From NCBI RefSeq assembly GCF_003918875.1, contig NW_025767399.1:124001-188000 (forward strand): DNA of 64,000 bases, in the 5' to 3' direction. Shown in pieces: positions 300 through 64,000 of this stretch (its first letter is position 1; each line of letters starts with the position of its first letter). The stretch is from Haliotis rubra (Eukaryota). A program made the position numbers and the translations under genes. The notes under the pieces are model-generated. The model had not been told where the DNA came from. It searched no databases and worked only from the letters and a program-made list of their open reading frames with translations.

Positions 300-940
300 G
301 CAAAGGGACATAACTCAGCACAGTAAATGACACAACTAAGACAAGGAATACAACTCTGGACAGTGAATGGCACAACTAAGACAAGGATACAACTCTGGAC
401 AGGAAATGGCGCCACTAAGACAAGGGACACAACTCTGGACAGGAAATGGTGCCACTAAGACAAGGGATACAACTCTGGACAGGAAATGGCACAACTAAGA
501 CAAGGGATACAACTCTGGACAGGAAATGGCGCCACTAAGACAAGGGACACAACTCTGGACAGGAAATGGCGCCACTAAGACAAGGGACACAACTCTGGAC
601 AGGAAATGGCGCCACTAAGACAAGGGACACAACTCTGGACAGGAAATGGCACAACTAAGACAGGGGATACAACTCTGGACAGGAAATGGCGCCACTAAGA
701 CAAGGGACACAACTCTGGACAGGAAATGGCGCCACTAAGACAAGGGACACAACTCTGGACAGGAAATGGCACAACTAAGACAAGGATACAACTCTGGACA
801 GGAAATGGCGCCACTAAGACAAGGGACACAACTCTGGACAGGAAATGGCACAACTAAGACAAGGGATACAACTCTGGACAGGAAATGGCACAACTAAGAC
901 AAGGGATACAACTCTGGACAGGAAATGGCACAACTAAGAC
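300..940. repeat. Intronic minisatellite, 38-39 bp unit (ACAACTCTGGACAGGAAATGGC[GCC/ACA]ACTAAGACAAGGG[AT/AC]), ~16 copies
   Basis: Directly visible tandem repeat ending ~20 bp from the NDUFS2 exon donor at 961. Confidence 0.95.
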
Positions 941-961
941 ATATTTTATTGATGAGTCTAC

Positions 962-21828: not shown

Positions 21829-24800
21829 TGCATGAGAGACAGAGAGAGAGAGTACACTTTGTTCAGAATAGTTGTTATTGCGATTGTATTAATATAACGT
21901 AGGTACAATGTATTTGTTTGTACATGTGTTCGTTCGCAGTACAGTTTGTTCGTGTGTTGTAGGCGCTGAGTGATGCTATAAGACTGACAGCGTCGACCAG
22001 AACTGTCTATGTGGAAGTAGAGAGCCAGCACAAGCAGATACCAGTATCCTAACCTCCATCCTGTACAAAGCTGAACATGTATACGGCTGGTATTTACCAA
22101 AACAGAGATCAGTCCGGCATCAGTAACCTCGAAACGATTCACATGTGCTGTATACAGTAGACGTGTACGTGTGTCACAGCCTATCAATAGCATATCATCA
22201 CGTACGTAGATTGTACGTTTATCTATGTAGAAGCCAGGAGCCAGGATATAAAACCGAGCGCATGGTTATTGATATGGTGCTATTGTGTTGCGATGGTTGG
22301 ACCATAGCTGGATATAGTTGCAACAAACGTCATTAATAACTGAATCATAGGTTACATAAAACATACCTTGAACTGTTGTCGATTAATATGGTTACTAAGT
22401 CAACAATTCAGACAGACAGATTTTATTTAGTAATGTGGGCCATATGGCCTATGTTACAATGTAGCTGACAGTATAAACTGAGTCAACAGTATACACATCC
22501 CGATATTGTTTCATATAATGCGCCCGTAAAATCTGTCAGGCGCGTAGCCCGATAGATTGCAAAGCTTTAAATTTAGATAGTATTGAGGGTTTGCCCAACC
22601 TTCAGGGGCGGATACAGCTTTTTGAGAAAGGGGGTGGGAGGGTGTTGCACACTATTGAGAAAAGGAGGGTGCATACTTCATTTTCACCCGAGTTTGAATG
22701 GTCATTTAATAAACTTTCATGGTGATCTTTAGCAACATTTATGTATACTCATGCCAATAATGGTTGTCACCCCTTCAATTTTTTAATTGGAGAGGGGTGG
22801 GGGTGATGTGTGTGGGTGTGGGGGAGGGGGGAGAGGTGACAACCATTACTGGCAAGAGTATATAAGCCCGGGCATTTTTATAATGGTAGCTAAGTCCCTG
22901 TGTGGTAATGATCACAAGTGAAGAAATCAGTCGACAATTCGATACTACGTGATACCTCCTAGATTATAATATATTATACACATCTAACTATCATCCATGT
23001 ATATGTTAGACTTTGGCACGAATGCGCTGCCGTAGTATATGGTTACAAATGATCTGTTTTGGTCTGTTTTGACTAATTGAGCACATGTGTAGTACTGAGA
23101 TACCAAAGTTAATTTAGGAACGGAACCAGATCTGCATTCCAGAAGGTTACAAATTCATGTCTTTCAATCACAAAATCTATTCTAATGCTGACGGTATGCG
23201 TACTTTAGATATTTTTACGTTTTGTAACATTAAAATGACAAATGTGGTGTCCATTATGATCCTTTATCGTGTATAAAATATTTGTAAACACGAAGCTGAC
23301 AAACTTGATTTGTTTTCGTCTAAAGACTCTTGTTAAGTGCTCCACGGAACTAGTGGTTGTCCCACCTGGTGTAGCTAGCGTTCATGAAGTGACCTATATC
23401 TTGGGGCAATGGTGTATCTTGGAGTTTTGATGACTAGACTGTTTAAAGGCATGCATGTTCTTTTCTCCAGCAACCAAACATATACTTTGGACCCACAACA
23501 CGGCTGGAATAATGCCGATGTGACGTAAAGCCCAACTCAACTCAACTCAACTTATCTTAAAACCCTTGATTCTCAAAGCTATCTGTAAATGTCAATTAAC
23601 TCTTCCCTACGTCGGCGGGTATTATGTGTACATGTGCATAGGTCAGCGTCCTTTCATCACATTGCGTAATATGCCTTGCTACAAAACCTGACAGATATGA
23701 TAAGTCAGAGAGACGGTCTCCATGGAGACGAGTTAAGGAGACAGTCTCCAGGGAGACGAGATAAGGAGACGGTCTCCAGCGTAGGAGATGGCCCAGATTA
23801 TCGACAGTCTAAGCGGACGGATTGTACGGCTAGTCGTGGCGTCGGTCAAGGCCGTCGCTTCGCCAACGACTACGTCTACGAAGAAGAATCACCGTCCGAC
23901 TTCTGCATGTGTGTGAGAGACGGAGCGGGTCCCGATGTGCGTTCTGTCACGTGTCTAACATCAACTTGTACCATTTCGACCATTATTCCCCAACCATAAT
24001 AAACATGGCTGCCGACGTCACCTGACATTTGTCTTCCGTCCGTCAACCACCCTCAACTACCATCCGAGAGCACACCATACGAATGCTCTTGGTCAGTAGT
24101 GATTGTGATTGTCCTAAATTGTTAATTTCATGTATTTTTTAATTGTTTTTAAGTACTTCTCATAGTGATATTATATACTTGTTTTTGAGAGTTGTTCCTA
24201 ATTGTCTGTTGAGTTGGTCCCAATAAGGGAATAACAACTTCCTCGCTTAGACATCGTATTCATTCTTTTCTATGATGATCGATATACATCGGATCCATTC
24301 GCTATCTTGACTACATTCAGAGGCCTATGAGAATGAGACGTCACTATAAATATAGAAGGCAAATAGGAGTACCAAATTCGGTTGACCTTCCACTCGTGCT
24401 TTTATGAGCAGACCACATGTTGATCGAAATGAATAGCAATCTTAATCAGAACATTGTTACATGTATTGTGTTACCCTGGCGCACAAAATTCCCTTGTTTG
24501 TCACCATTGTGAAATGGCGAGACGTTTACGACGTCGTCCGAATCCCCCAACAGTGCTGCATGAACACCAGAGGCCTATTTTACAATAATCTGTAAGGGCC
24601 AGCGGCTTCGACGTTCACTTTAGTTCATCATAATTGTCGTCATCTTTCTTTTTTGTTTGGAACAAAGTGTTTAATTTATTATTATTATTTTCTATATTTC
24701 AAGAGAATACAAATAAATTCCCCGCCGAAAGGCGGCTTTGTCGAATGTCCATAAGTGGATGCTGGAGCACAAGGATCAGGCCACTCCCCTATCATTCTAT

Positions 24801-28306: not shown

Positions 28307-29199
28307 ATGGTGTCCACCGTTATAGAACACATTGTGGATGCGTTGTTCGTGTTATTCATCTTCAGCCCATTGGTTGTATGTTACTGGAATAGTACCTGGA
28401 ACCTCATTGGACTATATCTTTTGCCAAGAACAAGATAGCGTCCGGATGGATATCGGTGGCAATAAGCATTGTGTTGATGGTGGCGTCATTTTTCACACAG
28501 GACGTTTTGAACAAGTATGTCAAGAAAGAAAAGTACGTGTCCTTTTACCTGGTGTCACGCCTCTTTACCTACGTCATGTCGTTTAGCCAGGTGAGCAACT
28601 GGCGAGGGATATGGGAACTTCTCAACCTGTACATCGGCATGACAATGCCTGGCTCACTGACAACTCTAGCTATCGGTACTGTAGGTCTGGTTGCCCTTCG
28701 TTCGTACAGGAACGTTTTGACGCCACCAGGAGCTTGGGTTCTTGACGTTGAGACCAACAACTATTTCACCATCCATCTGTTTGGAACAAAGGTAAGTCGA
28801 GAAGGGATATGTTAGAGTTGTTGTTGAGTTGGGTTTTGCGTCACATCGGCATTATCCCAGCCATATAGTGACGAGAACAAGTTTGCATTAATAAACATTG
28901 TAAGTGCATACTCGGAATGAGTATTATTTCAAAAACATATATTCATTACATTGTCATTTAAAAGCAGAAAAAAGTCATAGCACCAAATTTAAAGGCAGGC
29001 ATGTTAGAAGTGATGTATTGTGTTGTGTTGCGTTGTGTTGTGTTGTGTTGTGTTGTGTTGTGTTGTGTTGTGTTGTGTTGTATGTTATTCAGTTTAGAAC
29101 ATTGTCCCTAAAGTCCCCTTAAATAAGATAAAAAAGGCGAGATACTATTACTATAAAAAGGTGAAACAACTACAGTTAAGGCTTGTTTTGTATGGTACA

Positions 29200-29231
<32 letters not shown>

Positions 29232-29823
29232 CATACACGCACACACACATGATTCTTGAGTTTATCCATCCCCTTTTCATTTTCAGAAGGGCAGCGTCCT
29301 GTATGTCATTCACGTGCTCTTCGGTGTGGCTGTGGTGTCGACGCTGGTAGTGCTGGTCTGGTGGGGTCAGTGGATGGTTCTCCAACTCTCCATTTCACCC
29401 AACAACGACCTCTGGCGGGGAATCATCGTCTTCAGTGTCGGTAACGTGCTGGTAGTTACACTGATCGTCACACAGTTTCCCGCCAGAAAGCTTGCCGGAC
29501 ATCTACACACGACACACCCACTCCTTCAGATAGTGTTCGAGGACGCCTGTGTTTTGCTGGTATGCTTCAGTGCTGTGTGTTACTGGCACGGGCTGTGGGC
29601 TTTGCTGGGCGTGATGGTCATCGGGTATGATCCCAACTTGACACAGTGGTTACTCCATGCTCTAGGGTTTGGAGGGTTAATGCTGTTACGTGTATGTAGG
29701 TCTCTACAGTTCATGGGCTACAGTTTCGATGGCGCGTACCCTGAAGGTATTGGTCTGGTACAGACGCCATCTTACTGCAACACAATCTTGGCATCTCTAT
29801 GCAGAAGGGAGGTGAGTATATAA
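28307..29823 (+). pseudogene. Fuseless-like copy 3. Exons 28307-28791 and 29287-29811, 1-bp frameshift at ~28429
   Basis: CCAAGAACAAG vs CCAAGCAACAAG in copy 2; exon 1 is 485 bp vs 486 bp. Could be a sequencing error. Confidence 0.72.
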
Positions 29824-30629: not shown

Positions 30630-30815
30630 NNNNNNNNNNNNNNNNNNNNNNNNNNNNNNNNNNNNNNNNNNNNNNNNNNNNNNNNNNNNNNNNNNNNNNN
30701 NNNNNNNNNNNNNNNNNNNNNNNNNNNNNNNNNNNNNNNNNNNNNNNNNNNNNNNNNNNNNNNNNNNNNNNNNNNNNNNNNNNNNNNNNNNNNNNNNNNN
30801 NNNNNNNNNNNNNNN
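30630..30815. other. Assembly gap (186 N)
   Basis: Run of N; corresponds to the G-rich MITE segment ~22580-22856 of unit 1. Confidence 0.99.
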
Positions 30816-36350: not shown

Positions 36351-39300
36351 TTAACTATTCTTTCGACTACGCAGGTTGTAGCCATTCTGACTTTTGGCAT
36401 TCCCATTCATAACAGTCCCATTTTCTCTGTCTTTTATTTTCTGCATCTTCATGACCTCGTCCAGCGGGCCACAGCCCTCTAATGCACTGGGGCTGCGGAA
36501 GGACCCCCCAATCTTGTCCCAGAGTGTGAAGAACTGTCCATAGTTGTACAGGTAAAACAAGTGGTGGTCCATGTGGTGTGCAGACCCATTGATGAACGGA
36601 CGAAGAAGCCTTGGAACACGGTAGTCTCCATCATGGATGGACACGGTCCATAAGTTGACGAATATGAAGAGACCAAGGTAGGTGACTTTGTGAAGTGGGA
36701 AGAGGAAGGGATAGATGTGGTAGGGTAGGGACTGCAAGAAGCCGTCCAGGGGGTGGAAGGAGTGGCTGGCGAAGGGGGTGGGGACCTTCCACTTGTGGTG
36801 CAGCTTGTGAAGCCACTTGTACACATACTTGTGGTGCAGATAGCGGTGGATCCAGTAGATACACATGTCCGTGAACAGGATAAACGTCATCACACTGGAG
36901 AACACTCCAATCCAACCTGGAACAGACGTTAGACAAACACTGACGGTGTGAGAACAGACTCAACACTCCCAGCCAACTCTGCACTCTCATTACACAATAA
37001 CTGAGGCTGTGTTTGAACACTCAAAGCTTGTCTTGAACAGACATTATGCCAATATAAATGTTGTAGTTTCCATAACATTTTCAACCAGGGTTTGTTACCA
37101 CTACTCTGATAGCCCAAGACTGCTAAAAGGTGAAATGACGATGTTTTTTCTGGTAGACTTTATATTTTCATATCTTGTGTTAACATAGTGCATATGTGTT
37201 GGAGAAGACTGAAACGATTTTACTATGTTTGACAAATAATTTTATGTCTTTTATTGATATTATTATTCACCATTAAGAGTGAGTGAGTGAGTTTAGTTTT
37301 ACGCCACATTTAGCAATATTCCAGCAATATCACGGCGGGGGACACCAGAAATGAGCTTCACCCATTGTGCCCATCTTGGAAATCGAACCCCGGGTCTTCA
37401 GTGTGATGAGCAAACGCCTTAACCACTAGGCTACCCCATCGCCCCTAACCATTAAGAAGTAACCTGAAATGAGTGCAGATTGGATATCAGAAACGACATA
37501 ACTTCTGATATGCCTTGAGTACAGCAAGTTTCAAAAGTATAAATGATGATGAGATAAGGTGTTAGGGAAGTATGACGTAGCACCTCACCTAGCCTGGTGT
37601 CCTGCACTGAGTCATACAGCTTGCTGTACCCTCGGACCTCCAGGAAGAAGAGAGCGACTGTGGGGACGCTCATGAAGGGGATGGAGGTGCAGGCCACCTG
37701 GATCTCCAGGAACACCTGGTTCTGGGGACAAACAGTGATGTAACCATTCACACAAATATAACACTGAATACTGTACAAACAGTGATGTAACCATTCAGAC
37801 AAATATAACACTGAATACTGTACAAACAGTGATGTAACCATTCACACAAATATAACACGGAATACTGTACAAAGCAGTAATGTATCTAATTTAAACACGT
37901 TTCTGTCTGACAGTGTTAGAAAATATATGTTTAAAAATACTAGCATTACCGACTAGCTAGATGATATTTTACAAGCTAATTTTTTATTTGTGTAAACAGC
38001 AACTACCAGATACAAAGAGAAATCTGGTAGTAGTAAAAGGAACAATATACAATTTACAAGTTTCAATCTATGTCAGTATCAAACAGTTTCAGTGACAAGG
38101 GACCATATCAAACACAACAAACAGAACACTTAAATCAGCCAAATATCTAGTCACTGACACCTTTTGGCAGGAAACCTGCATATTTGACACTTGAATAACA
38201 ATATCCTTGCACAATAAATAGAATATCTAGTAGTAACACTACATTGTTTGCTTGTTCAATAGCAGAATTAAAATAACTTTGCCATGGTCTATTGTGATAT
38301 AAGAAATATATTATTTTGGTTAAATGCAAAAGCCAGGATCAGAGTCATGGTAATAGCCCGTGATCAGTGTATCCTGGCTGCACTAAGGGACATGAGTCTT
38401 CACAGAACTTCTGTGATGCCACTGACCACTAAGGAAACATGCAACACTAAGATTTACCTGTAAACTTTAGTAAACAGAAGTGAGTGAGTGAGGTTTTATG
38501 CAGCTTTTAGCAATATTCCAGCCATTTCACAGCAGTGGAAACCAGAAAATGGGCTTTACACATTGTACCCATTTGGGAAATCGAACCCGGGACTTCAGCG
38601 TGACGAGCAGATGCCTTAACCACTAGGCTACCCCATCACCCCTGAGTAAACAGAACATGTTTGATGCAGATGCATGCTTTGAAAAAAATAGATATGAATG
38701 GAAAATGGTATCATGAATGAAATTGCACTTTGGTACCTACATGCTGACTACTGTAAATCATGAAATTAATGCGAAAAATGCGTCTGTACACTTCTCGCAT
38801 TATTATAATGTCGCATTTCAGTCTGACCATGTCTACTTTTGAGAACTTAATAAAAGACAGAAAACGTAAATCTGTTGACACTACACATTACATCAATACA
38901 GGTCACTTCCTCATTACAGGAATCTCAAACCACGTGTAATTATCACTGGTTACAATCATTGGTCATTGTTTAAAGTCACTCAAGCACATCAGCCAGACTG
39001 GACATTCTCCAGCCACTTGTTTGTTGTACCCGAGTGGTAGATGACTTGCGCCTTTCAAGTCGGATTACGTTTATCCATGTTGTCATAAGACAAGTAGTAG
39101 CAAGCAATCACGTGATCAAACATGGCACCGTAATCAAACCATCCTCAGTTCATTTCCATTCATTGCTTAACAAGCTCAATTCAGGTGATGTGTAAAGAGC
39201 AAGTGTGAAACAAAAAAGAACACCACCAAAGATTCAGGGTGTCACATTTTATCATCAACACAGATTCCTGAGCTCGCATTAATTTCGTGACACTTTTAGA

Positions 39301-44651: not shown

Positions 44652-47600
44652 ATGGCGAAAGCGGCAGGAGCTGTGTCTCGAATGGGCATGTCCCTTGTCA
44701 CAAAGACAGGGAACTCAGCTAAGGGTGACTATACAGAAACATTGTAGTCTATCGCGGTTATTTGAACTCCAAATAGTGTGTATACGATGCCCTCATTTTA
44801 CTGACAGCTTGCTGAATCCCCTGTGGTATTGACTTGACCTTGGTAAAAGTTGGTTTTGTGAAATCATGTAGGATTGGAATGTAAACAGCCATAATGTGGA
44901 CGCAAAATAGATGGTGGGACAAGAGTGCAGTTTCACTTGTATGATCCTTAGGTTCAGGTACCTCCCGTATCAAACATCTCTTAACAATCCTCGGGGTTTG
45001 TACGCCAGGTAAATTGATGCAAGTTTATTCTATGAATAACGTTTGCCGAAGACGAAGAACAATATTTGACCAGTTGATGAATATGGCTTGAGGACGTGCG
45101 TTACGTGAATTCAACAGTAGCCACTGTGAACAGCACAGCACATCATTCAAGCAGTTCAAGACCAACTGACAAGGTCATGAAATTCAGAATCAGTGCCTAG
45201 TAATGACATTACGTTTGGTACAGGTTATCTTTACACTTGTAATAAAGACAATAATGCACAAAATTCTACCATGCTCTCTGACCCAAAGGATTTTAAAGTG
45301 AAAAGGGGAACCTAAGGAAATAAAACACAGCATGTTATATTATGCATTTTGCTATTCAGATTGTCAAAACACTATATTATAGTGAAATGGTACTAATTTG
45401 CTTCTTGCCAGAAACACTGGTAATAAATGCTTAACAGTATTCACTGTGATACTGATGTATGTTATCAGACTTACAGTAGTATTATCCTGTCTGAATTGAA
45501 ATTAAAAGTTTAGTGCCTCACACTGACAGTGACACAATTTTGTTTTGGTACTCATCACATTATTTTCTTGATGCATTAATTTCATCATTTGCAGTGTTGT
45601 TTCACTTGTCAAGCAGTAACATTAGTATCACAACACCAACACGACAGAAAATGAATAGCAGTACACTTTGTACTATATAGTGGTTCAGTGACACATGTGA
45701 CAATTGAGGCTGTTAATAGTCACATGTAAGTTGTGCTCTGCAAAGATTTTCAACCAAGTCCTCATTCTTCAGTGAAATTGGTCATTGAAGGCATTGCACC
45801 AAATTGATTCTTGCATAAGTTAAACACCTCTGTGTTTGCCAGTAGTGCTGTCAATATAGTTTATCCTCCAAGTTGTAATTTAACTTTATTTTGCTGTTTA
45901 TTGATTAGGTCTTCAAGCCTATGCCATCCCACGCCTACAGACATTCTGGAAGTATGCCAAGGTTGAGTTGAAGCCCCCATCATTGGGCGAGATGGGTCAG
46001 GTGCAGGAGGGAATCAACAACATTATTGTGTCTGCACGCACAGGGAAGTGGAAGCAACTCACAGTTAGGGTGGGTAATATCATCAGGGTACCAAAAGTTC
46101 TAAAATGTACTCATGTATCATTAATCTTGGCACAACAGGATAAATGTTGGATTATTTAGTTTCTCATTTTTTTATTCCAAAAGATTACTGGTGTACTGTA
46201 AAGTAAGATTGAGACTGCTGTACATTTTCATGTTCATCATGTTCATATTTAACAGTGTAGGAAAGATGTAGAAAATCTAGCCTGTCCTCCAAATATAAAT
46301 ATAACACCATTTCAAGACTTAAAACTGGATTGTTTTATTTTAAGCTATCATTTAATATGACACACATGATTATTCTAGTATCCTTTGGCAGTAAATATTC
46401 AAAAAGGTTATAATCATTATATATATATATATATATATATATACTAGGCACATAAAGAAACTGTGCATCCAAAAATTTAAAATCTAAATTTATCAAACCT
46501 GTGTAGACACATAAGGATTTAAACTCAGAGATTAGTGACATGTATCCAACATGTATGCACGTGCCACGTTCCATGACGTCAGTGGGTTCGTCCTTGAGAC
46601 GTGCAATACGTTGTTGCACGTGCATTCCGGGAAAGAGAAACAGAGCAAATGAATGCCACACAATACTGTCACTTTGGAAAGCTCAACCCCTGCCATTGCG
46701 ATCGTTCAAAAATTAAATGGCTATTGAAACGCGATAGCATGCCAAGGCTCACGCCTGCACAACGTCATGAGGCCAATGGGATGGTCCGTGGGGGAATGTC
46801 TCAACGACAAGTGGCTGCACATTTCCACTGCCACCGGAACACCATTTCTGCACTGGTGAGACGCTAACAGAACACAAATGACGTCATCAATCGGCCACGT
46901 TCTGAATGTCCACGTGTAACAACGCCAAGACAGGACAGATGGATAAGGGTGACCCATCTTCGCCACAGGTTTCAGACTGCAGTGATGACTGCCCGAACCA
47001 TCCCAGGACTTCGCCGTATCCATCATCCTAACACAGTTCGACAACATTTACGTCATCATGGGATCAGACCACGACACGCCCCGCCATACGGCCTATCCTG
47101 ACACAACGTCATCGACAAGCTCGCCGAATGTGGTGCCGAAATCATGTCCGCAGACCCTTGTTTTGGTGTGGAGAAATGTTGTTTTTACAGATGAGTCCAG
47201 GTTTAACATTTCCCATAGTGATGGACGTCAACGTGCCTATAGACGCGTGGGAGAACGTTATGCACAGGCCTGTGTCTTGGAGAGGAATCGCTTTGGTGGT
47301 GGTTCCGTGATGAGTTGGGGTGGAATAACAGCACGCCAAAGAACTCCTTTGGTGATTGTTCAGGGCAACTTACCTGGTGTGGGCTACAGGGATCAGATTC
47401 TTCGACCTGTGGCAATTCCTTTTCTGCAACATCATGGCCCTGGGTTAACATTCCAACAGGACAATGCCCGCCCTCATACGGCAAGGGTTGCTATGGATTT
47501 CTTGCAACACCACAACGTTGACTTACTGCCTTGGCCTGCAAATTCACCGGATCTCTCCCCGATAGAGCATGTTTGGGACGAGATGGATCGACGTCTACAC

Positions 47601-48338
47601 CATCTTCCTCATCCGCCAGATAACGTCCTTGACCTTGCAACAGAACTTGAGAGAATCTGGCGTGACGTTCCACAAGCCTTCCTTGCACGTCTGATAGGCT
47701 CTATGCGTCGTCGATGCACTGCTGTTCTCAATGTCGATGGTGGACAGACCCGTTATTGAGCTTGTGACATGGTCATTTGACCCCTGTCCCGCTGTGGACT
47801 CGTGATGTCATTGTGATTGACTTTTCAATTGAAATTCTCCCGACTTGTCATGGTCTCATGATCCCTCCATTAAAGTTTATATGAACCTTTGATATTGTTA
47901 TCGTACTTATCAACTGGGATAATATTTTGACGATGCCCAGTTTCTTTATGTGGCTAGTATATATATGTCATTGGTTTGCTAAAACTGACCCGACATGAGG
48001 ACGGACTAGATATTTTTTTTTTTAACCTGTCCTCCACAATATTTACCCGTGTCGGAGGTTGGGACGGGCTATCTTTCCTACACTGTATTTAAGTGTACAA
48101 GATGCACCAGAATTCCATTGTACTGCAGTGTGGGGCTAGTATTGACAAGCCATTTAATAGCTGAACTTCAGATATCAAAAGGATTGACTCATTTTTTCTT
48201 TCATTGCAGCAAGCAGGTCTAAACACATTAGTGGGTCTGGAGGTACTTATGTGTTTCTACATTGGCGAAATCATTGGCAAGAGAAACATCGTCGGTTACT
48301 ATATACCAGGTGCTGTCCACTATGAGGGCTCTGTATAG
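44652..48338 (+). CDS. ATP5MG: Mitochondrial ATP synthase subunit g, ~120 aa. Exons 44652-44724, 45909-46069, 48210-48338
   Basis: PRLQTFWKYAKVELKPPS...SARTGKWKQLTVR-QAGLNTLVGLEVLMCFYIGEIIGKRNIVGY, with the GEIIG GxxxG motif. Compatible splice phases; ATTAAA at 48451. Confidence 0.93.
46253..48085. mobile_element. MITE (TIR CAGTGTAGGAAAGAT, 7-bp TSD TATTTAA) hosting a nested Tc1
   Basis: Perfect 15-bp TIRs at 46253 and 48071-48085; TSD at 46246-46252 and 48086-48092. Confidence 0.8.
46442..47959 (+). mobile_element. Tc1 (DD34E) transposon in ATP5MG intron 2; transposase ~46739-47759 disrupted
   Basis: TIRs TACTAGGCACATAAAGAAACTG / CAGTTTCTTTATGTGGCTAGTA within (TA)n. VFTDESRF, QQDNARPH and SPDLSPIE with 34 residues between D and E. 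Confidence 0.95.
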
Positions 48339-53877: not shown

Positions 53878-54735
53878 TTATATTAATATTTCTTCAATAA
53901 AGAAACGATAATTAAGTAAAGTAACACAAACATTCAACATTTATTTGTTTAAGAAAAACGTTAATTTATATTTTTACACCACCTGTATTATTAGCATAAA
54001 TGTAAAGACTATTTCATATTTCTGTTGTTGAACTCTGAAAAAAACTTAAGTTGTTTTGGTACCAAATTCTCTCCTGTAAACTGCCCTTTAAATGCATGGG
54101 AATGTTAAATCAATTGAAATAAAAAATAGGTTCACTATAGGTGAGTTGATATATTGACAACATAATACATTTATCATCTTTCTAAAGATATTAAGGCTAA
54201 AAAGCAATTTTCTAGCGGTACACTTGCAGAATACCGGATACCCAATTATATACATTCTATTGTGCGCGTGAGGCTCCTACATATAGAAGAAACAGAGAGC
54301 GCGAGCCTGCGAGCTATCTAATAAAAATACGAATTTAAGGTAAAAAATAAGGTTAAAATCGAATTCCTCACCTTACTTCCGGTTTAGGAAACCTAAACTG
54401 GGGATTTTAACAGCGTTCACTGACGTAAACAGAGTAAAAAGTAATCGTGTGTTGAAATTTTATTCAAATGCATGCTGGGAAAAGGAACTCTACAGTGTGG
54501 GAACACTTTGATGGTAAGTGTTTTTTGATTGGTAAGGTAAGGTAGGTAAGGCTTTTAAATAAAGGGGGGTACCCCCTTTACCCCCATTATCTTACCTTTT
54601 ATTTAGCTTTAATATTGTTTGATATTTAATATTGAATGCTGCTTCAACACAGCCTTCTTTCATGGCGTGCCGTTGCTAAGGAAACAAAACGGAAGTGCCC
54701 AAAAATAAATGCGCAATCAAAATAAAAATGGCGGA

Positions 54736-54790
54736 TAGGTATCCGGTATTCTGTAATCTTGCCAAACACTTACAGAATACCGGATACCTA
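54736..54790. repeat. 21-bp perfect inverted repeat with 13-nt loop; third copy at ~54221-54242
   Basis: TAGGTATCCGGTATTCTGTAA (54736-54756) / TTACAGAATACCGGATACCTA (54770-54790). Confidence 0.9.
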
Positions 54791-54912
54791 CCGGATACCA
54801 TGCTGACAACATCTCTTTTTGGCTTAATGAGCTTTACAGGAACGAATTGCTGATAAGGTTGATTGGCCAAAGGTGCATCTTCGAATCAAAATCGTCAGTT
54901 ACTTTCATCTTG

Positions 54913-55826
54913 AGGTCAAAGGGAGACCACTCTATGTGATGAATGGGAGAGAACTCAACCGCACTCTGCATCAAAGTTTTCGTTGGTGGTCAAAGGGAGA
55001 CAACTCAACCTTGCCCCATTTGTGTTTATGGTCAAAGGGAGACAACTCAATCAAACTCATAGCGTCACGTTTTCGTTTGTGGTCAAAGGGAGATAACTCA
55101 ATCGAATTGATGTTAATATTTCGGTTTGTGGTCAAAGGGAGGCAACTCAACCTCGCCCGTATATGTGTTGATGGTCAAAGGGAGACAACTCAATCAAACT
55201 CACATCGTCACGGTTTCGTTTGTGGTCAAAGCGAGATAACTCAACCCTGCCCCATTTGTGTTTATGGTCAAAGGGAGACAACTAAATCAAACTCATAGCG
55301 TCACGTTTTCGTTTGTGGTCAAAGGGAGATAACTCAATCGATCTTATAGTATCAACGTTGTCGTTGGTGGTCAAAGGGAGACAACTCAAACGAATTCATG
55401 TCAATATTTCGTTTTGTGGTCAAAGGGAGGCAACTAAACATTGTCCCCGCGTTTGTGTTCATAGTCAAAGGGAGACAACTCAATCGAACTAATGGCATGA
55501 ACAGTTTTGTTGGTGGTCAAAGGGAGACAACTGAAACAAGTTAAATACTATCACTATTTCGCTCTGTGGTCAAGGGAGACAACTCAAACGAATTGATGTC
55601 AATATTTCGTTTTGTGGTCAAAGGGAGGCAACTCAACCTCGTCCGCATATGTGTTTATGGTCAAAGGGAGACAACTCAATCAAACTCATAGCGTCACGTT
55701 TTCGTTTGTGGTCAAAGGGAGATAACTCAATCGAACTCATAGCATCAACGTCTTTTTTGGTGGTCAAAGGGAGGCAACTCAACCGCGTCCATCTTTTGTG
55801 ATAATGGTCTTAGGGAAATAATTCAT
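54913..55826 (+). repeat. Complex repeat-spacer array: 19 conserved ~22-bp cores TGGTCAAAGGGAG[AC/AT/GC]AACTCAA with variable 20-31 bp spacers (CRISPR-like appearance, not CRISPR)
   Basis: Cores start at 54914, 54988, 55030, 55081, 55130, 55173, 55224, 55266, 55317, 55369, 55418, 55463, 55515, 55568, 55616, 55659, 55710, 55762 and 55806. Confidence 0.92.
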
Positions 55827-57038
55827 TCAGCATAGCGTGCTAGAGTTCTGTCCCTTGTTTGAAGTACAATTTAGACTCAGTGCACATGTCCAATCTTTAC
55901 AGTGTTCCGTTCTTCAGACAAGGGGGATAACAGCTCGCAATATTGCTTATCTCCCTTTGTATGAAACCTGTATGGAGCTTGTCTCAGGGGGAACAACTCT
56001 TGAAGGCTTAATTCCCTTAGACTGGTTCCTGCATCATTCGGTTTGGTGTCGATGCTCACCTTTCCGTGTCTAGACTGGTTTGCCTGCTCAATTGCGCTTC
56101 TACTTTACGCTGCCAGTCTCTACCAAGTTTATCGCAGGAACGACCGGGACCCACTTTATACCGCCTTTGACTTGAAATGCCAAACCTTGTGTAGAGTTTA
56201 AATGACAGACACTGTGAGGAACTTTAGCAAGGGACTTAACTCTTGTTTTGCCTCTGACATGATTACCTCCCTTTGACCACTCGCAATTTCATTTCACGTT
56301 CCTCTAATGGTAGGCTTATGTACAATGTACGTGTATGTCTTCCATAATACGTTTGGACCTAGATCTAATTAGTGTACACTATTAAAATATTGTTTTAATA
56401 GAGTTGAACAATTAATATGGAATGGTTAAGCGAAGGACGATCGGAACTTGACATGTTACTGTTCACTCTAATAGGCGAAAGACTGAGCCACGACCAAATT
56501 TTCATGTAGTACTCGTATCAGTAAAGGCCAAATATTATTACTTGTAGGGATCCCCATAAACATGTTTGTCGCACAAGGAACGCAAATCGATCGATTTGTC
56601 ACCGTCATCGTACTTCAACGTGAGATGTTCCTCATAAGAACAATCACTAGTCTTGTTTGTCTGAAACAAGGACGGTTACCCGCAGGCTCCACAAACAAAT
56701 AACAAAGCCTTCACAGCATTGCGGTTGTTTTAAGGTCGAGAAAAGTATGAGCTAGCACAAAATGTACAGAAAAACTTATATGACATGCCAGAGATGAACT
56801 TGGAAAACGAACAGCTCTCTCAGCTCATAAAATGTTAAGGGTTTTTTGGGTCTAAAGTGATCCTCTCTCGATAGATCGTGGATTTGTTACTCCTTTATAC
56901 TCCGTTTGACTTCATTTGAGAAACTAACACACAATCTAATAATTACAACAAAACCAAATAACAGCCAGGTAAAAAACATACGTGTGAAGTAAAATTTCAA
57001 TTTCACACGCGCAACTCGCACAGCTGGCTGTTCTACCA

Positions 57039-57626: not shown

Positions 57627-58567
57627 CACCAAAACTCAGACAACAGGTGTGATCACATTGATGGCGTAGTGACTCACAACAGTTGTGTGTATTCTTAAGT
57701 TGTTTCATTGTTACTCTGGTAAGGAGAGGACGTGACTTCTAAATAAAATGCATTTAAGGATAAAGTGAACAATAACGCTGGCAGGGTATGGTTTGGGGGA
57801 GAGGTGGTTGTTGCTATACATATTCCTGTCACACTTCCACTGGCATGTCAGTGATAAGTGGTAAGAATCTTTACTTGTTAAAATTCCAAGCAATTATAAC
57901 TCTGCGGATTTGTATATTCTCTGAAATGAAGAAAGTCTCTCTCTGGGCTCCCTTTTGTTTTAGTTTATTAATATACTTCAGGAAACGTTTTTTCTGTAGT
58001 ATATGTTCATTTCCGAGACTAGATGTTAGTCTACCTCAACCCCTGTCTGACCTCTGCCTACTCCCATTATTACTGCCATTATTGCTGTTCATCAACAACC
58101 ATCCCTCCTTAACGACAAACCCTAATCCACAAAGACTGGGCTCGTTCTCGTCTACCGGCATGCGATGGTTGAATGCAGCGAGGCGGCTGCCAAACAACAG
58201 AAGTATCAACTTAATGCCTCATCTGAATTGCCACCCTCACTCCACGCTTTGAGTCTAAACACTAATATTCTCTAACCTGCATTCCCCTGCACAAAACATT
58301 CCTCTTTCCTCTACACAATCTACACCAAGTTCACGTTGGCTAGCTGCTGCTCGGTAACGCCTAATTCCTGCTGTGAGAGCTTTCAATCAGTCACATCCGG
58401 GCCCTATTATCCATTCCTGCGTTCATTTCACACATTCTCCACAACCAGTGCCTCCCAGGACACGCCAGTCGTGGAAACACCCCTACACTTATTGTCAGGA
58501 ATATGCACCTCTCTATACACATACACACATTATCTCTGAACTGTTGTACTTTCTGGTGTGATATATA

Positions 58568-60095
58568 TACTGAATCAAAAAAAAAACTTCACAAAATGTA
58601 ATTTGAAAAATAATGAATAATTTTTCTCTGATGATACATCTATGTATCCGAAATGGGATCCCTATCTTTCGACTCTAGAAAAACGTTAGCAAAACCCACT
58701 CAAACCCATCCCTTCGTCGTGCAAATGACGTTAGTGCCAAATCAGGTTTTGCACGTGCAGTCGATCACGTGATCTTCGCATCGAAGTTTTCTTCATATGC
58801 ACGTGTTTGCATTGGCCTCAAGAATTGAAAAAACACTTTTAAACCACAGTTCTAACGGTACTTGAAATGCCACGATTGTCAAATGTGCAACGTGAACGTG
58901 CCCTTGGCATGTTGCAAGCGGGAAGATCAGTTATTGACATCGCAAGAGCAATGGGATGCAGCCGTCGTACTGTGTATGACTTGCGAGGTCGTCTACAACA
59001 AACTGGCATCACTTCTGATCGCCCAAGGTCGGGTCGTCCACGTGTGACGTCACGAGCAGAAGACCGTCAAATCGTCCTACGTCACCTATGTGACAGATTT
59101 CTGCCGGCTACACGAACCAGTGTTGAGATGTTTAGAGGTCGGCTGTCCTCACAGACCATTCGAAATCGGTTGCGGGCTGCCAATCTCCATTCTCGACGTC
59201 CATATCGTGGACCAATATTGACGCCGTTTCATCAACGTCAACGTCTGCTGTGGGCCCAACGTCACCTCCGATGGACCCAGAGAGACTGGAATCGAGTCGT
59301 CTTTAGCGATGCAGGTTTACCCTCAGATTCGCGGACGGCAGACATAGAGTCTGGAGACGACGTCCTGAACGGTATGCCCAATGTTGTGTACAGGAAGTCG
59401 ACAGATTCGGTGGCGAGAGTTGCATGGTGTGGGATGCTTTCTGTGGGAACAACCGTTCCCGACTTCTGGTCATCCGTGGAAACCTCACAGCTGCTGCTTA
59501 CCGCGACCAGGTGCTCACCCCTGAACTCGTTCCTTTCATGGCGGCACATGGCCCAGGTCTACAGTTCCAGCATGATAATGCTCGGCCGCATACCGCGATG
59601 TTGACACGAAATTTCCTTCAAAACGCTGGAATCAACGTCATGGACTGGCCATCGAGGTCCCCTGACCTTAATCCAATAGAGCACGTTTGGGATGCACTTG
59701 GGAGAAGGCTTCGTGGTCTTAGGAACCAACCTCAGAATTTGCAGGAACTTGGGGCTGCCTTGCAAGAGCAATGGCGCAGAATCCCCAACTACGTGTTCAC
59801 AAGCATCAGGCAGTCGATGAGGAGACGGTGTTTGGCAGTGGTGAATGCGCGGGGCGGCCATACACGATACTGAACTGAGAAATTTCGCATTTTTATTCTT
59901 GTGACTTGACATTCTGTATACCCATGTTTTGGAACAGCGGTGTAGCCTAATGGAATTGATTATGGCACTGTCAGTGTATCGAGTACATCACACAGATCTC
60001 AGCAATGAAATAATAACAATTTAACCATCTTACCATCTCTTGTTCTTTTATAGTGCCCTGAAGAAAGAATGTGAAGTTTCTTTTTTGACTCAGTA
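58568..60095 (+). mobile_element. Tc1 (DD34E) transposon, near-intact; transposase 58867-59873 with one frameshift at ~59311
   Basis: TIRs TACTGAATCAAAAAAAAAACTTCACA / TGTGAAGTTTCTTTTTTGACTCAGTA in TA context. HTH, PRSGRPRVTS, VVFSD, QHDNARPH, SPDLNPIEHVW and ARGGHTRY*. Confidence 0.95.
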
Positions 60096-60129
60096 TATAT
60101 AAGTAGACGATAGTATCTCTCCACCCCGT

Positions 60130-60490: not shown

Positions 60491-61194
60491 AAGGTCTTAG
60501 TTTCCGGTACACATTACGCTACCCATAAGTAACTGGGTATGGACTGGATAATCCAGCGACCGAGAGGATGATGATCGATCCACGTAATCAATCAATTTAC
60601 AAAGCCCGAACACCCTATAGAGTAGATAACCTTGAAACACTTGTAACCTGTTCCAACCCAGGAACTCGACAGGATTGATATGAAACGATAACCGGATATT
60701 GATGACTATGGAGTCTTGTTTGTCGGTCAAAGTCAGTTTGCGTAAAGTTTGTTGTTTCACGCCGCAATCAGCAAGCCGTCAACAATCCACTATGGACCAC
60801 ACAGACCAGTGAGTGATATTACCAGCAACTTCACACTCTAACATACATGTCACAGACCATGTCTGCTGCAGTGTCCCCGTGTTGAGGGTTGTCTAAACGC
60901 GGTGTTTATGCCTCCCCTACCAATACTCCTACAACATCACGACGAGTACACAGTAAATGAGCTTCACACGTTGTATCCTTGTTGGGAAATAAACCCGGAC
61001 CTTCGGCGTGAGAGCCAGAGCTTCAACCACTGGCCTCCTGCTGATATGGAGACTATACTACAGATGCTGATGCGCAGAATTTACTGGACGTTTGTCATCA
61101 TGAATCTGTTTCGATATTTCAGACCCCAGGCGTCGATGTGATGGTGGGTTCAGTTGGAATATGAGTGCGATTGGCGACAGCTTCTCAGTACTCT

Positions 61195-61510
61195 TGGTAA
61201 ACCACATAGGCATTGGTAAACCACATAGGCAGTGGTAAACCACATAGGCATTGGTAAACCATATAGGCATTGGTAAACCACATGACAGTGGTAAACCACA
61301 TAGGCAGTGGTAAACCACATAGGCAGTGGTAAACCAAATAGGCAGTGGTAAACCACTTAGGCAGTGGTAAACCACATAGGCATTGGTAAACCACATAGGC
61401 AGTGGTAAACCACATAGGCATTGGTAAACCACATAGGTATTGGTAAACCACATAGGCATTGGTAAACCACACAGGCATTGGTAAACCACATAGGCATTGG
61501 TAAATCACAT
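61195..61510. repeat. 19-bp minisatellite TGGTAAACCACATAGGCA[T/G], ~16 copies
   Basis: Directly visible; it generates the spurious repetitive ORFs at 61058-61508. Confidence 0.95.
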
Positions 61511-61810
61511 AGAGACATGTTTGATACGTTACGCTGTATCAGCAGCTTGTATTGCTTTGTAACTCGCTGTTGTGTTCATGTGGTTATGTGAGAGCGAGGA
61601 GAGCCTTGGTGAACCTACTGTGAAGGTTCATCCTGCTAGAAGCAGACCTGGTATGTGTACACTTTCAGACTGTCACTGCCTCTACGGCAGTAGGTGCTAT
61701 TAATTCAGTCCACTCTGCTAACCAACCGATCGTGTAAATCCATAGGCCTACTACTCTCACGGGACACGCCGACGTACACGTGCTAATATACTCACCTTCT
61801 CAAGTTGAGG

Positions 61811-63365: not shown

Positions 63366-64000
63366 TACTCTTCAAAACAAGAAACTTGACATAAGACAAA
63401 TTTGAATTTTAGGAAAATATTTGACACAAACCAATCGATGCTGAATCCCAGCATGTGGGGAAATGGTTGCCGACGACAAAACGTATGAAACAAGAACGTA
63501 ACTTTACACTCACGTCTGTAGTGAATCGCTAAAACGCACCCTACATGAAATGCACGAGCATCATGAAATTGTTTATCACCCTAAGCTGCAGCCTATGACT
63601 GTAGGCTTTAAAAAAGCCACATCAATGGTACTCCACATGCATTGCTTTAAGCCACTATAGACGACAATAGAATGAAAAGACTGACAGAAGCTCAACGACA
63701 CAAGCCATCGGCCGTTTACAAGGACGGACATCGCAGCATGATGTGGCAAGGCACTTCAGTGTGTCCATACAGACCATCTCAAACCTATGGACCCGATACT
63801 AAAATACAGGGAGTGTTAATGACAGACCCAGGTCAGGTCGACCTGGAGTTACCTACGCCGCCCAGGATCGCTACACCTGGTTGAGACTTTTTCGTTCAAA
63901 CACCACGGCCGCATCGTCCACAACAATCCAAATAGCTGGACTGCTCCTAATCTCCGACCAGACAGTGCTCAATATTGGCTATGGAAAGCCAGACTTTTTG
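63366..64000 (+). mobile_element. Decayed Tc1-like transposon running off the right edge
   Basis: TA+TACTCTTCAAAACAAGAAAC TIR-like start. MKRLTEAQRHK.IGRLQ...DVARHFSVSIQTI...TGSVNDRPRSGRPGVT across frameshifts. Confidence 0.8.

What the first reader, a model, noticed from the sequence alone, without database searches (positions are those of the whole stretch)
54913..55826. CRISPR-looking repeat-spacer array in an animal genome, with near-helical phasing
Seen: 19 copies of a ~22-bp core (TGGTCAAAGGGAGACAACTCAA) are much better conserved than the sequence between them. Periods are 74,42,51,49,43,51,42,51,52,49,45,52,53,48,43,51,52,44 bp, i.e. two groups near 4 and 5 helical turns. Spacers fall into recurring classes: short CC.GCCC..TGTGTT.A x6; TCAAACTCA.A.CGTCACG x4; CGAATT.ATGT.AATATTTCG x3; CGA.CT.AT.G.AT.AAC x3; plus a unique one. 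The core variant tracks the neighbouring spacer: GGC cores always precede a short spacer and GAT cores always follow the TCAAACTCA class, which implies higher-order duplication. Inference: a plain satellite should drift uniformly. Conserved cores with free spacers suggest selection on a protein-binding site array (transposase subterminal repeats or a chromatin/TF landing pad) or a processed small-RNA array.
Basis: partly seen in the sequence, partly recalled or inferred. Interest (0 to 1): 0.8.

Follow-up and report, generated by a model that had tools for sequence, protein, structure and literature searches.

The report
Shared-core minisatellite in abalone DNA
The "CRISPR-looking" array is a real tandem repeat in an abalone genome; its conserved 22-base core is one copy-type of a short motif found tens of thousands of times in this genome, in dispersed repeats and many other small arrays, so it is a repeat-derived minisatellite and not an immune or small-RNA array.

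Summary
There are 19 cores (TGGTCAAAGGGAGRYAACTCAA) plus one decayed copy, with periods of 42-53 bp, 4-5 recurring spacer classes and a ~195-198-bp four-unit higher-order repeat. Cores are 93% alike between classes; spacers are 53% alike, which is random level. Even within a class, cores differ 3.6-fold less than spacers (p=4.5e-5). Helical phasing is not supported.

The core is not private to this array. Its centre, AAGGG-RVRY-AACTC, occurs 31,465 times in the 1.38-Gb genome against 106 for the reversed control. It lies near the 3' end of an old interspersed repeat at least 100 bp long. It also forms the direct and inverted arms of a ~225-bp palindromic module, and it is the shared core of many other minisatellites whose spacers are specific to each array (470 adjacent pairs vs 0 control). 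One of those arrays is at 303-941 of this window.

A 92%-identical six-unit copy lies inverted 338 kb away, and other species hold the locus with different unit numbers. I found no RNA fold, no Rfam match, no RNA run and no cas-like context.

Best reading: a repeat-family recognition motif, probably a protein-binding site, seeded a minisatellite that grew by unequal exchange. The binding protein is unidentified.

The parts
54799..54912 (+). Left flank of the duplicated unit. Homology with the paralog (own genome C2509:517.0-517.4 kb, locus L002) starts exactly at 54799.
   Evidence: L002 1501-1850 matches window 55150-54799 at 92%; the first 16 bases occur only here and in the paralog.
54913..54986 (+). 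Two decayed leading cores (units 1-2: AGGTCAAAGGGAGACCACTCTA and TGATGAATGGGAGAGAACTCAA) with their spacer.
   Evidence: The same two units open the paralog array.
54987..55804 (+). Seventeen well-kept units, each a 22-nt core TGGTCAAAGGGAGRYAACTCAA plus a spacer of class A, B, C, D or E. The order is A-B-C-A-B-A-B-D-C-A-D-E-C-A-B-D-A. The higher-order unit is about 195-198 bp (A-B-D-C).
55805..55826 (+). Decayed last core, TGGTCTTAGGGAAATAATTCAT.
55827..56003 (+). Right flank shared with the paralog at 68% identity. It carries motif-like copies in both orientations: 55843-55857 (-), 55920-55936 (+), 55946-55959 (-) and 55985-56002 (+).
   Evidence: L002 698-1027 matches window 55704-56003.
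56187..56219 (+). Centre motif TTGTGTAGAGTTTAAATGACAGACACTGTGAGG. It is homologous to the centre of the dispersed ~225-bp palindromic module.
   Evidence: the same motif lies at the centre of the modules in L023, L050, L061, L062, L048 and L021, and in L002.
56228..56245 (+). Motif-like copy CAAGGGACTTAACTCTTG.
56260..56281 (-). Single inverted copy of the array core (GTGGTCAAAGGGAGGTAATCA on the - strand), facing the array.
   Evidence: 18 nt, 94% complementary to array cores; aligns with the right arm of the palindromic module.
303..941 (+). A second, independent minisatellite in the same window built on the same motif. It has 16 units of 40 bp: AAGGGAYACAACTCTGGACAGGAAATGGCRCMACTAAGAC.
   Evidence: The unit resembles the 3'-end block of the interspersed repeat at least 100 bp long.

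Best explanation
The feature is a minisatellite with a higher-order structure, seeded by a recognition motif that belongs to repeat families of this genome. The genome is an abalone according to earlier unchecked notes of this scan.

Shown:
- The core TGGTCAAAGGGAGRYAACTCAA contains the bipartite motif AAGGG-RVRY-AACTC, which is more than 100-fold over-represented genome-wide.
- This motif lies 8 nt from the sharp 3' end of an old interspersed repeat at least 100 bp long.
- It forms direct and inverted arms of a ~225-bp palindromic module that is both dispersed and arranged in ~400-bp tandem arrays.
- It occurs in a hairpin-bearing dispersed repeat.
- It is the common core of many other minisatellites that each have their own spacer and period.
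- An ancestral block of six cores with unlike spacers (1-2-A-B-D-C) existed before a local inverted duplication. In this copy it grew to 19-20 units, mainly as a ~195-bp four-unit block. Unit number differs in other species' assemblies.

Inferred:
- The motif is the binding site of a sequence-specific protein that acts on these repeats: a transposase, a recombinase, a retroelement enzyme, or a host factor that they carry.
- Arrays arise when neighbouring direct copies of the motif undergo unequal exchange or replication slippage, possibly helped by breaks at the bound site.
- Cores stay alike because they began as copies of a constrained site and remain constrained or homogenised. Spacers were never homologous (A against the rest) or drift freely (B, C, D).

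The array is not a CRISPR-like or small-RNA array.
For: - Array anatomy and core-over-spacer conservation.
- Genome-wide counts in the own genome: the 21-mer with at most 1 mismatch gives 96 hits vs 0 control. AAGGGRVRYAACTC gives 31,465 vs 106. AAGGGNNNNAACTC gives 41,212 vs 1,979, so 9% of the possible centres hold 76% of the copies.
- Spacing is specific within the window: AGGG-N4-AACTC only.
- Same-strand pairs 16-46 nt apart: 470 vs 0 control, against about 11 expected from motif density. Units differ between arrays (19, 24, 32, 35, 46, 47, 53, 57 bp and others; a 47-bp array spans about 3.5 kb at C36:1632593-1636057).
- Inverted pairs: 67 vs 0.
- The ~225-bp palindromic module appears in L023, L050, L061, L062 and L048 and in ~400-bp tandem arrays on at least 5 contigs.
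- Interspersed repeat at least 100 bp long with the motif at its 3' end: 38 scored matches on other contigs at 72-80% identity (two short ones higher), ending within 10 nt of each other. Recurrent context TGGCRCRCCYAAGGGRCRYAACTCTGCACAGCAA.
- Paralog with 6 units at 92% identity.
- Contigs of other organisms cover the array and flanks at about 93-97% identity, with joints that skip 344-693 bp of the array.
Against: - No protein that binds the motif, and no autonomous element carrying it, was found. The five Tc1-like remnants in the window have their own unrelated terminal repeats.
- This particular element has only two copies, both on one contig, and no target-site duplication was seen. Its own mobility is therefore not shown.
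- 46 independent dispersed copies of the 21-mer have no flanking similarity at all. A transposon end would not give this. It fits free-standing, individually maintained sites better, although ascertainment from the large pool of general-motif copies explains part of it.
- Lower core divergence could also come from gene conversion without any binding function.
Confidence: 0.6

Rival explanations
1. The motif is the site of a major host DNA-binding protein (an architectural, insulator-type or transcription factor). Repeats spread it as passengers, and the array is a functional multi-site landing pad kept by host-level selection.
For: - There are tens of thousands of copies with two fixed 5-nt halves one helical turn apart and a constrained centre.
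- Dispersed copies of the 21-mer have no flanking similarity.
- Cores are kept over spacers even after the higher-order duplication.
- The locus is retained in other species.
- The motif occurs in single, convergent and tandem arrangements.
Against: - No chromatin, expression or gene-proximity data could be obtained.
- The locus diverges between species at an ordinary 3-7%, and unit number is free to vary.
- Centre variants look like CpG decay series, as in neutral repeat copies.
- The motif does not fit the CTCF consensus at its invariant positions. This comparison was made by hand from memory of that consensus and is not a tool result.
Confidence: 0.2
2. The array is a functionless satellite. 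Cores look conserved only because all 19 can convert one another, while each spacer class has just 3-6 partners, and because the ancestral block happened to hold several copies of a common repeat word.
For: - The higher-order structure and class-linked core variants show duplication history and not site-by-site selection.
- Array length varies between assemblies.
- Only two copies of this element exist.
Against: - Spacers B, C and D have drifted to 62-72% identity while their cores stay 94-96% alike.
- A 22-27-nt tract is short for efficient conversion. This rests on general knowledge and was not tested here.
- The same core heads many unrelated arrays, which calls for a property of the core itself.
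Confidence: 0.12
3. The array is transcribed and cut into unit-length small RNAs (CRISPR-like, piRNA-like or miRNA-sponge-like), with the 22-nt core as the guide or the target.
For: The core is 22 nt long, and its complement starts with U. This is seen directly in the sequence and is suggestive only.
Against: - Folding is weaker than for shuffled sequence on both strands (z = +1.8 and +1.5).
- The core is not palindromic, and no inverted partner lies within units.
- No Rfam match, even at E up to 5.
- No RNA run was listed as holding the stretch.
- Spacers recur instead of being unique.
Confidence: 0.03

Closest known systems
Shared-core hypervariable minisatellites of human DNA (Jeffreys core; later linked to the PRDM9 hotspot motif). 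Recalled from general knowledge.
   Same: Many independent tandem arrays share one short core while the rest of each unit is specific to its array. Unit number varies between genomes.
   Different: The core here is a different, longer bipartite word (AAGGG-RVRY-AACTC). It is also carried by interspersed repeats in tens of thousands of copies. No link to recombination hotspots or to a zinc-finger protein was tested.
Foldback and Galileo-type DNA transposons, whose long terminal inverted repeats are built of expanding tandem subrepeats. Recalled from general knowledge.
   Same: Arrays of a conserved short motif face each other across a non-repetitive middle, with unequal numbers on the two sides: 19 vs 1 in the window and 3 vs 6 in the paralog.
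   Different: There is no transposase, no target-site duplication and only two copies on one contig. The outermost sequences of the two sides are not inverted copies of each other.
Satellite-like tandem repeats carried by non-autonomous mobile elements in molluscs (Cg_HINE Helentron derivatives, PMC7492417; DTC84 MITEs of Donax, PMC3879986).
   Same: Short tandem arrays are embedded in, and spread with, interspersed elements, which gives many short arrays scattered over the genome.
   Different: HINE hallmarks (an 11-12-bp subterminal inverted repeat with its complementary repeat, a microsatellite in the left flank, a 3' palindrome in a ~60-bp right flank) were not seen by eye in these flanks. 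Units here are 42-53 bp with a conserved core, against ~160-170-bp uniform monomers there.
CENP-B box in alpha satellite, a protein-binding box kept inside drifting satellite monomers and bound by a protein that derives from a pogo-like transposase. Recalled from general knowledge.
   Same: A bipartite box with two fixed halves and a free centre is conserved far above the rest of the repeat unit.
   Different: The array is only 0.9 kb, nothing suggests a centromeric position, and the binding protein is unknown.
CTCF sites spread by SINE B2 and present in tandem arrays such as DXZ4. Recalled from general knowledge.
   Same: There are tens of thousands of motif copies: some free-standing, some carried by a short interspersed repeat, some in tandem arrays.
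   Different: The motif does not match the CTCF consensus at its invariant positions. No binding data exist.

Membership tests
CRISPR array | Spacers are unique, of near-constant length and unrelated to each other | tested here: not met
   Spacers fall into 4-5 recurring classes of 20-31 nt. B, C and D are 62-72% alike, and members of one class are 72-95% alike.
CRISPR array | Prokaryotic or viral context with a leader and cas genes nearby | tested here: not met
   The genome is a 1.38-Gb animal genome. The neighbours are Tc1-like transposase remnants and interspersed repeats.
CRISPR array | The repeat forms a hairpin, or the transcript is processed into unit-length RNAs | tested here: not met
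   Folding z-scores are +1.8 and +1.5. There is no Rfam match. No RNA run was listed, so processing itself could not be tested.
Minisatellite with higher-order repeat | Head-to-tail units of 10-100 bp with a longer superimposed period | tested here: met
   TRF periods are 43, 52 and 198 bp. The unit order shows repeated A-B-D-C blocks.
Minisatellite with higher-order repeat | Unit number varies between copies, individuals or species | tested here: met
   The paralog has 6 units against 19-20 here. Contigs of other organisms join across 344-693 bp of the array (contigs only, and a paralog origin is not excluded).
Shared-core minisatellite family | Independent arrays share a short core but differ in the rest of the unit | tested here: met
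   There are 470 adjacent same-strand motif pairs vs 0 control. At least a dozen multi-unit arrays with unrelated spacers and periods appear among the first 100 pairs listed. Window 303-941 is another such array.
Shared-core minisatellite family | The core coincides with recombination hotspots or is bound by a hotspot-specifying protein | not testable with these tools
   No recombination map or binding data are available.
Foldback-like DNA transposon / transposase subterminal repeats | Motif arrays in inverted orientation at both ends of a discrete element | tested here: inconclusive
   Facing cores exist (19 vs 1 here, 3 vs 6 in the paralog). The outer flanks of the two sides are unrelated, and the right boundary is undefined.
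Foldback-like DNA transposon / transposase subterminal repeats | Target-site duplications and multiple dispersed copies with the same ends | tested here: not met
   Only two copies share the left terminus, both on contig C2509. End-to-end alignment of related elements found no terminal repeat beyond the motif and no duplication.
Foldback-like DNA transposon / transposase subterminal repeats | An autonomous partner encodes a transposase that binds the motif | not tested
   No ORF near motif clusters in the fetched loci looked like a partner. The Tc1-like elements in the window carry different terminal repeats.
Helentron-derived HINE with central tandem repeats | 5' subterminal inverted repeat plus complementary repeat and microsatellite in the left flank; 3' subterminal repeat plus palindrome in a ~60-bp right flank | tested here: inconclusive
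   The features were taken from PMC7492417. Reading 54799-54912 and 55827-55900 by eye shows no microsatellite and no matching 11-12-bp subterminal pair. No formal search was done.

The most novel reading that the evidence does not exclude
AAGGG-RVRY-AACTC may be the target of one abundant sequence-specific DNA-binding protein of abalones that itself promotes local breakage and unequal exchange. That would make it a mollusc counterpart of the human minisatellite core and PRDM9 hotspot motif, or of an insulator site spread by repeats. On this reading the motif creates arrays wherever two copies lie close together, and the many free-standing copies are maintained binding sites.
Probability: 0.12. 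Interest if true: 0.7.

Novelty: new member of a known kind. Interest (0 to 1): 0.38.

Why it matters
On its own the array is an ordinary repeat-derived minisatellite, and the CRISPR resemblance is superficial. What deserves a note is the motif behind it. A bipartite 14-nt word with tens of thousands of copies sits at the ends and arms of several repeat families and is the common core of many independent small arrays in an abalone genome. I found no description of it in the open literature searched by sequence or by topic.

Identifying the protein that reads the motif would name the enzyme or factor behind a sizeable share of this genome's repeats. It would also give a testable case of how short binding sites seed tandem arrays. 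For genome annotators the motif is a simple marker for a class of repeats that may otherwise be reported again and again as 'repeat-spacer arrays'.

Tried and rejected
- **Rfam:** the whole window at gathering threshold, ten related loci, and E-value scans of the array region and of a motif block gave nothing relevant: one tRNA-like repeat head and one sub-threshold snoRNA match.
- **Hammerhead, snRNA-promoter and spliced-leader ideas:** dropped. No such genes lie downstream of dispersed motif copies, and the flanks are unrelated.
- **Tc1/mariner link:** five Tc1-like remnants lie in the window, one next to the 40-bp array. Their terminal repeats (1043-1062/2542-2561 and 58562-58593/60070-60101) are a different sequence.
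- **Left flank as the start of the interspersed repeat family (at least 100 bp):** alignment scores fall within the shuffles.
- **Extended terminal inverted repeats or target duplications around related elements:** none found.
- **Literature search by motif sequence:** only chance primer matches.
- **Viral contigs:** one chance-level hit.
- **RNA evidence:** no RNA run was listed. The single read-laying run used DNA contigs.
- **Limits met:** I did not try to get round either. This limited work on the ~400-bp arrays and on the high-copy hairpin family.
- **Reading the motif as CTCF, THAP, X-box or GATA sites:** considered by hand from remembered consensus sequences. None fits the invariant positions, so none is claimed.

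Full report
**1. What is there**

A decayed 20th core lies at 55805-55826.

Tandem Repeats Finder reports the region with periods of 43, 52 and 198 bp. Cutting the array at core starts gives five spacer classes:
- A: 20-23 nt, six units
- B: 29 nt, four units
- C: 26-27 nt, three units
- D: 30 nt, three units
- E: 31 nt, one unit

The two leading units are decayed.

**2. Is the core better kept than the spacers?**

Yes, by two measures.
- Between classes, cores are 93% identical and spacers 53%. Shuffled spacers give 47% under the same aligner.
- B, C and D spacers are distantly related (62-72%), while their cores are 94-96% alike.
- Within classes, that is since the higher-order duplication, 10 of 352 core cells and 43 of 425 spacer cells differ from the class consensus. 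That is 2.8% against 10.1%, Fisher p = 4.5e-5.

**3. Helical phasing**

This part of the observation does not hold. Treating all 17 periods as independent gives R = 0.51, but the units are duplicates of a few classes. With classes as the observations, Rayleigh p = 0.21. A period of 8.8 fits better than 10.5. The absolute phase of core starts has R = 0.05. The two length groups simply reflect the short A spacer against the longer B-E spacers.

**4. History of this locus**

The own genome has 1.38 Gb in 2855 contigs. It holds one close relative, 338 kb away on the same contig and in inverted orientation (L002). That copy matches window 54799-55150 at 92% and the right flank 55704-56003 at 68%. 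Its array has six units in the order 1-2-A-B-D-C. The window has 1-2-A-B-C-A-B-A-B-D-C-A-D-E-C-A-B-D-A.

A block of cores with unlike spacers therefore existed before the duplication. The window copy then grew, largely in ~195-bp A-B-D-C steps. Homology with the paralog starts exactly at 54799, and that terminus occurs nowhere else in the data held.

In both copies, arrays or single cores face each other across a ~430-650-bp middle: 19 against 1 in the window (inverted core at 56260-56281) and 3 against 6 in the paralog.

Assembled contigs from runs labelled as two other organisms cover the array and its flanks at roughly 93-97% identity. They contain joints that skip 344-693 bp of the array. 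The locus, or its paralog, is therefore older than those species splits, and its unit number is free to change. These are contigs and not reads, so I draw no conclusion from depth.

**5. The core is not private to the array**

Genome-wide counts in the own genome, with the reversed pattern as control:

| Pattern | Hits | Control |
|---|---|---|
| GGTCAAAGGGAGRYAACTCAA, at most 1 mismatch | 96 | 0 |
| AAGGGRVRYAACTC | 31,465 | 106 |
| AAGGGNNNNAACTC | 41,212 | 1,979 |
| TGGTCAAAGGGARNYAAC | 243 | 0 |

- About 65 of the 96 hits for the 21-mer lie outside the array and its paralog.
- The RVRY centres are 9% of the possible centres but hold 76% of the AAGGGNNNNAACTC copies.
- In the window, only the 4-nt spacing between AGGG and AACTC is enriched.
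- The array's own version of the motif (the TGGTCAAAGGGA prefix) is therefore a minor variant of a very common word.

**6. Where the motif sits**

(a) An old interspersed repeat. A 261-nt query around one motif block gave 38 scored matches on other contigs. Most span about 90-100 nt at 72-80% identity, and nearly all end within 10 nt of each other, 8 nt after AACTC. The 5' limit may be set by the query copy, so the family can be longer than 100 bp. Its usual context is TGGCRCRCCYAAGGGRCRYAACTCTGCACAGCAA, which accounts for roughly a third of the first 100 genome hits.

(b) A ~225-bp palindromic module. Its arms are direct and inverted motif copies around a centre, CAGTGTGTGAAGTTTTAAA..GACACTGTG.GGAGTT. 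It is seen in L023, L050, L061, L062 and L048. It is also repeated in ~400-bp tandem arrays on at least five contigs. Window 56187-56281 is the right half of such a module.

(c) A dispersed hairpin-bearing repeat, which dominates the 67 close inverted pairs (0 in the control).

(d) Many other minisatellites. Same-strand motif pairs 16-46 nt apart number 470 against 0 in the control, and about 11 are expected from motif density. The listed arrays have their own spacers and periods (19, 24, 32, 35, 46, 47, 53, 57 bp and others), including a 47-bp array that spans about 3.5 kb. The 40-bp array at 303-941 of this window is one of them.

By contrast, arrays with this array's own core version are rare. 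Of 20 adjacent pairs of GGTCAAAGGGAG, 10 lie in this array and one in the paralog.

**7. Free-standing copies**

Pairwise comparison of about 55 loci holding the 21-mer shows that homology is usually limited to 18-25 nt. In 46 independent copies, the information content falls to background at -2 and +21. This fits a transposon end poorly and favours discrete sites.

The result has to be discounted, however. Several thousand general-motif copies exist, so about a dozen 21-mer matches are expected from random flanks alone, and mild flank preferences could supply the rest.

**8. Tests of the RNA and CRISPR readings**

- Six units fold less well than dinucleotide shuffles on either strand (z = +1.8 and +1.5).
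- Rfam finds nothing in the window, in related loci, or in the array region at E up to 5.
- No RNA run was listed as holding the stretch. This does not prove that it is silent.
- Spacers recur, and apart from the paralog they have no other match in the genome at the sensitivity used.
- The surroundings are repeats: a high-copy ~165-bp element at 54602-54766, inverted repeats of its end, and five Tc1-like transposase remnants in the window.

**9. Interpretation**

The simplest account has four steps.
- A short bipartite word is the recognition motif of several repeat families of this genome.
- Regions that hold two or more direct copies of it expand by unequal exchange or slippage, with the period set by the distance between copies.
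- Here a block of four such copies with unlike intervening sequence became the higher-order unit.
- The cores remain alike because they are, or recently were, constrained sites.

The two fixed 5-nt halves lie one helical turn apart with a constrained centre, and both orientations are used. This points to recognition by a protein and not to a nucleic-acid structure. The centres of paired inverted copies do not co-vary.

My evidence does not separate three candidates for that protein: a transposase or recombinase, a retroelement enzyme that reads the 3' end of the interspersed repeat, or a host factor whose sites ride on repeats. No candidate protein was found.

**10. Comparison with known systems**

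In how it works, the array resembles:
- the expanding subrepeat arrays in the ends of Foldback and Galileo-type transposons;
- protein-binding boxes kept inside satellites (the CENP-B box);
- at the genome level, the shared-core minisatellites of human DNA.

In molluscs, short satellite-like arrays carried by non-autonomous elements are well documented (PMC7492417, PMC3879986, PMC8268682). The hallmarks of those Helentron-derived elements were not seen here.

It is not a CRISPR array by any defining feature except repeat regularity. Searches of the open literature by motif sequence and by topic found no description of this motif.

**11. Limits**

- The identity of the organism (blacklip abalone) comes only from earlier unchecked notes of this scan.
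The ~400-bp arrays, the large 47-bp array and the hairpin family were therefore seen only as coordinates or short printed matches.
- Genome counts are lower bounds, as the tool states.
- Cross-species evidence rests on assembled contigs and may mix the locus with its paralog.

Noticed in passing
window 303-941: A 16-unit, 40-bp minisatellite (93% matches) whose unit carries the same AAGGG-N4-AACTC motif (AAGGGAYACAACTCTGGACAG) plus a weaker second copy. It lies about 100 bp from a Tc1-like element (1043-2561) but outside that element's terminal repeats.
   Followed up: partly
window 54602-54766; also 54224-54242, 54736-54756 and 54770-54799: A ~165-bp interspersed repeat with at least 40 copies at 90-96% identity abuts the array's left flank. 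Its end sequence GGTATCCGGTATTCTGTAA recurs inverted at 54224 and 54770. This forms the perfect 21-nt hairpin at 54736-54790 that another first-stage note read as part of a composite element.
   Followed up: partly
window 1306-2374(-), 5092-5496(+), 46739-47756(+), 58867-59870(+), 63701-63973(+): Five Tc1/mariner-type transposase remnants (HTH_Tnp_Tc3_2 and DDE_3 domains) from at least two lineages. The copy at 58562-60101 keeps 32-nt terminal inverted repeats but is frameshifted.
   Followed up: partly
own genome C36:1632593-1636057: A tandem array of a 47-bp unit (AAGGGAMACAACTCTGCAAATCAAGTTGCGGCTGTTCTGATGTGGCT) spanning about 3.5 kb. It is the largest motif-core minisatellite seen in the listings, with units that mostly alternate between ACAC and AAAC centres.
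   Followed up: no
own genome C2242:121.8-123.3 kb, C2067:2526.3-2528.2 kb, C2412:2652.3-2654.1 kb, C974, C376: The ~225-bp palindromic motif module is repeated with a ~400-bp period. It looks like an undescribed satellite-like family in which only the module part is conserved (69-78% identity to the L050 copy).
   Followed up: no
window 16439-16685 vs 23533-23779, and 20980-21206 vs 29010-29249: The same small tandem repeats recur about 7-8 kb apart, which suggests a tandem segmental duplication. It covers the region with two Fuseless-domain ORFs (10056-10571 and 21271-21828). An assembly gap lies at 30630-30815.
   Followed up: no
window 61194-61512, 37728-37884 and 2738-2894: Three further minisatellites: a 19-bp unit x 16.8, a 47-bp unit x 3.3 and a 48-bp unit x 3.4. 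The last, read on the - strand, has a motif-like AGGCTAGTAACTC in each unit. The first two do not carry the motif.
   Followed up: no
L057, L071 and L080 (own genome C861:38-41 kb, C2067:3061-3064 kb, C2226:592-595 kb): One copy of the 21-mer sits inside a multi-copy retroelement with an RNase H-like ORF, at the same position in all three copies. An earlier first-stage note of this scan reports a repeat-spacer array of hairpin motifs inside a tyrosine-recombinase retrotransposon of this genome. A link was not examined.
   Followed up: no
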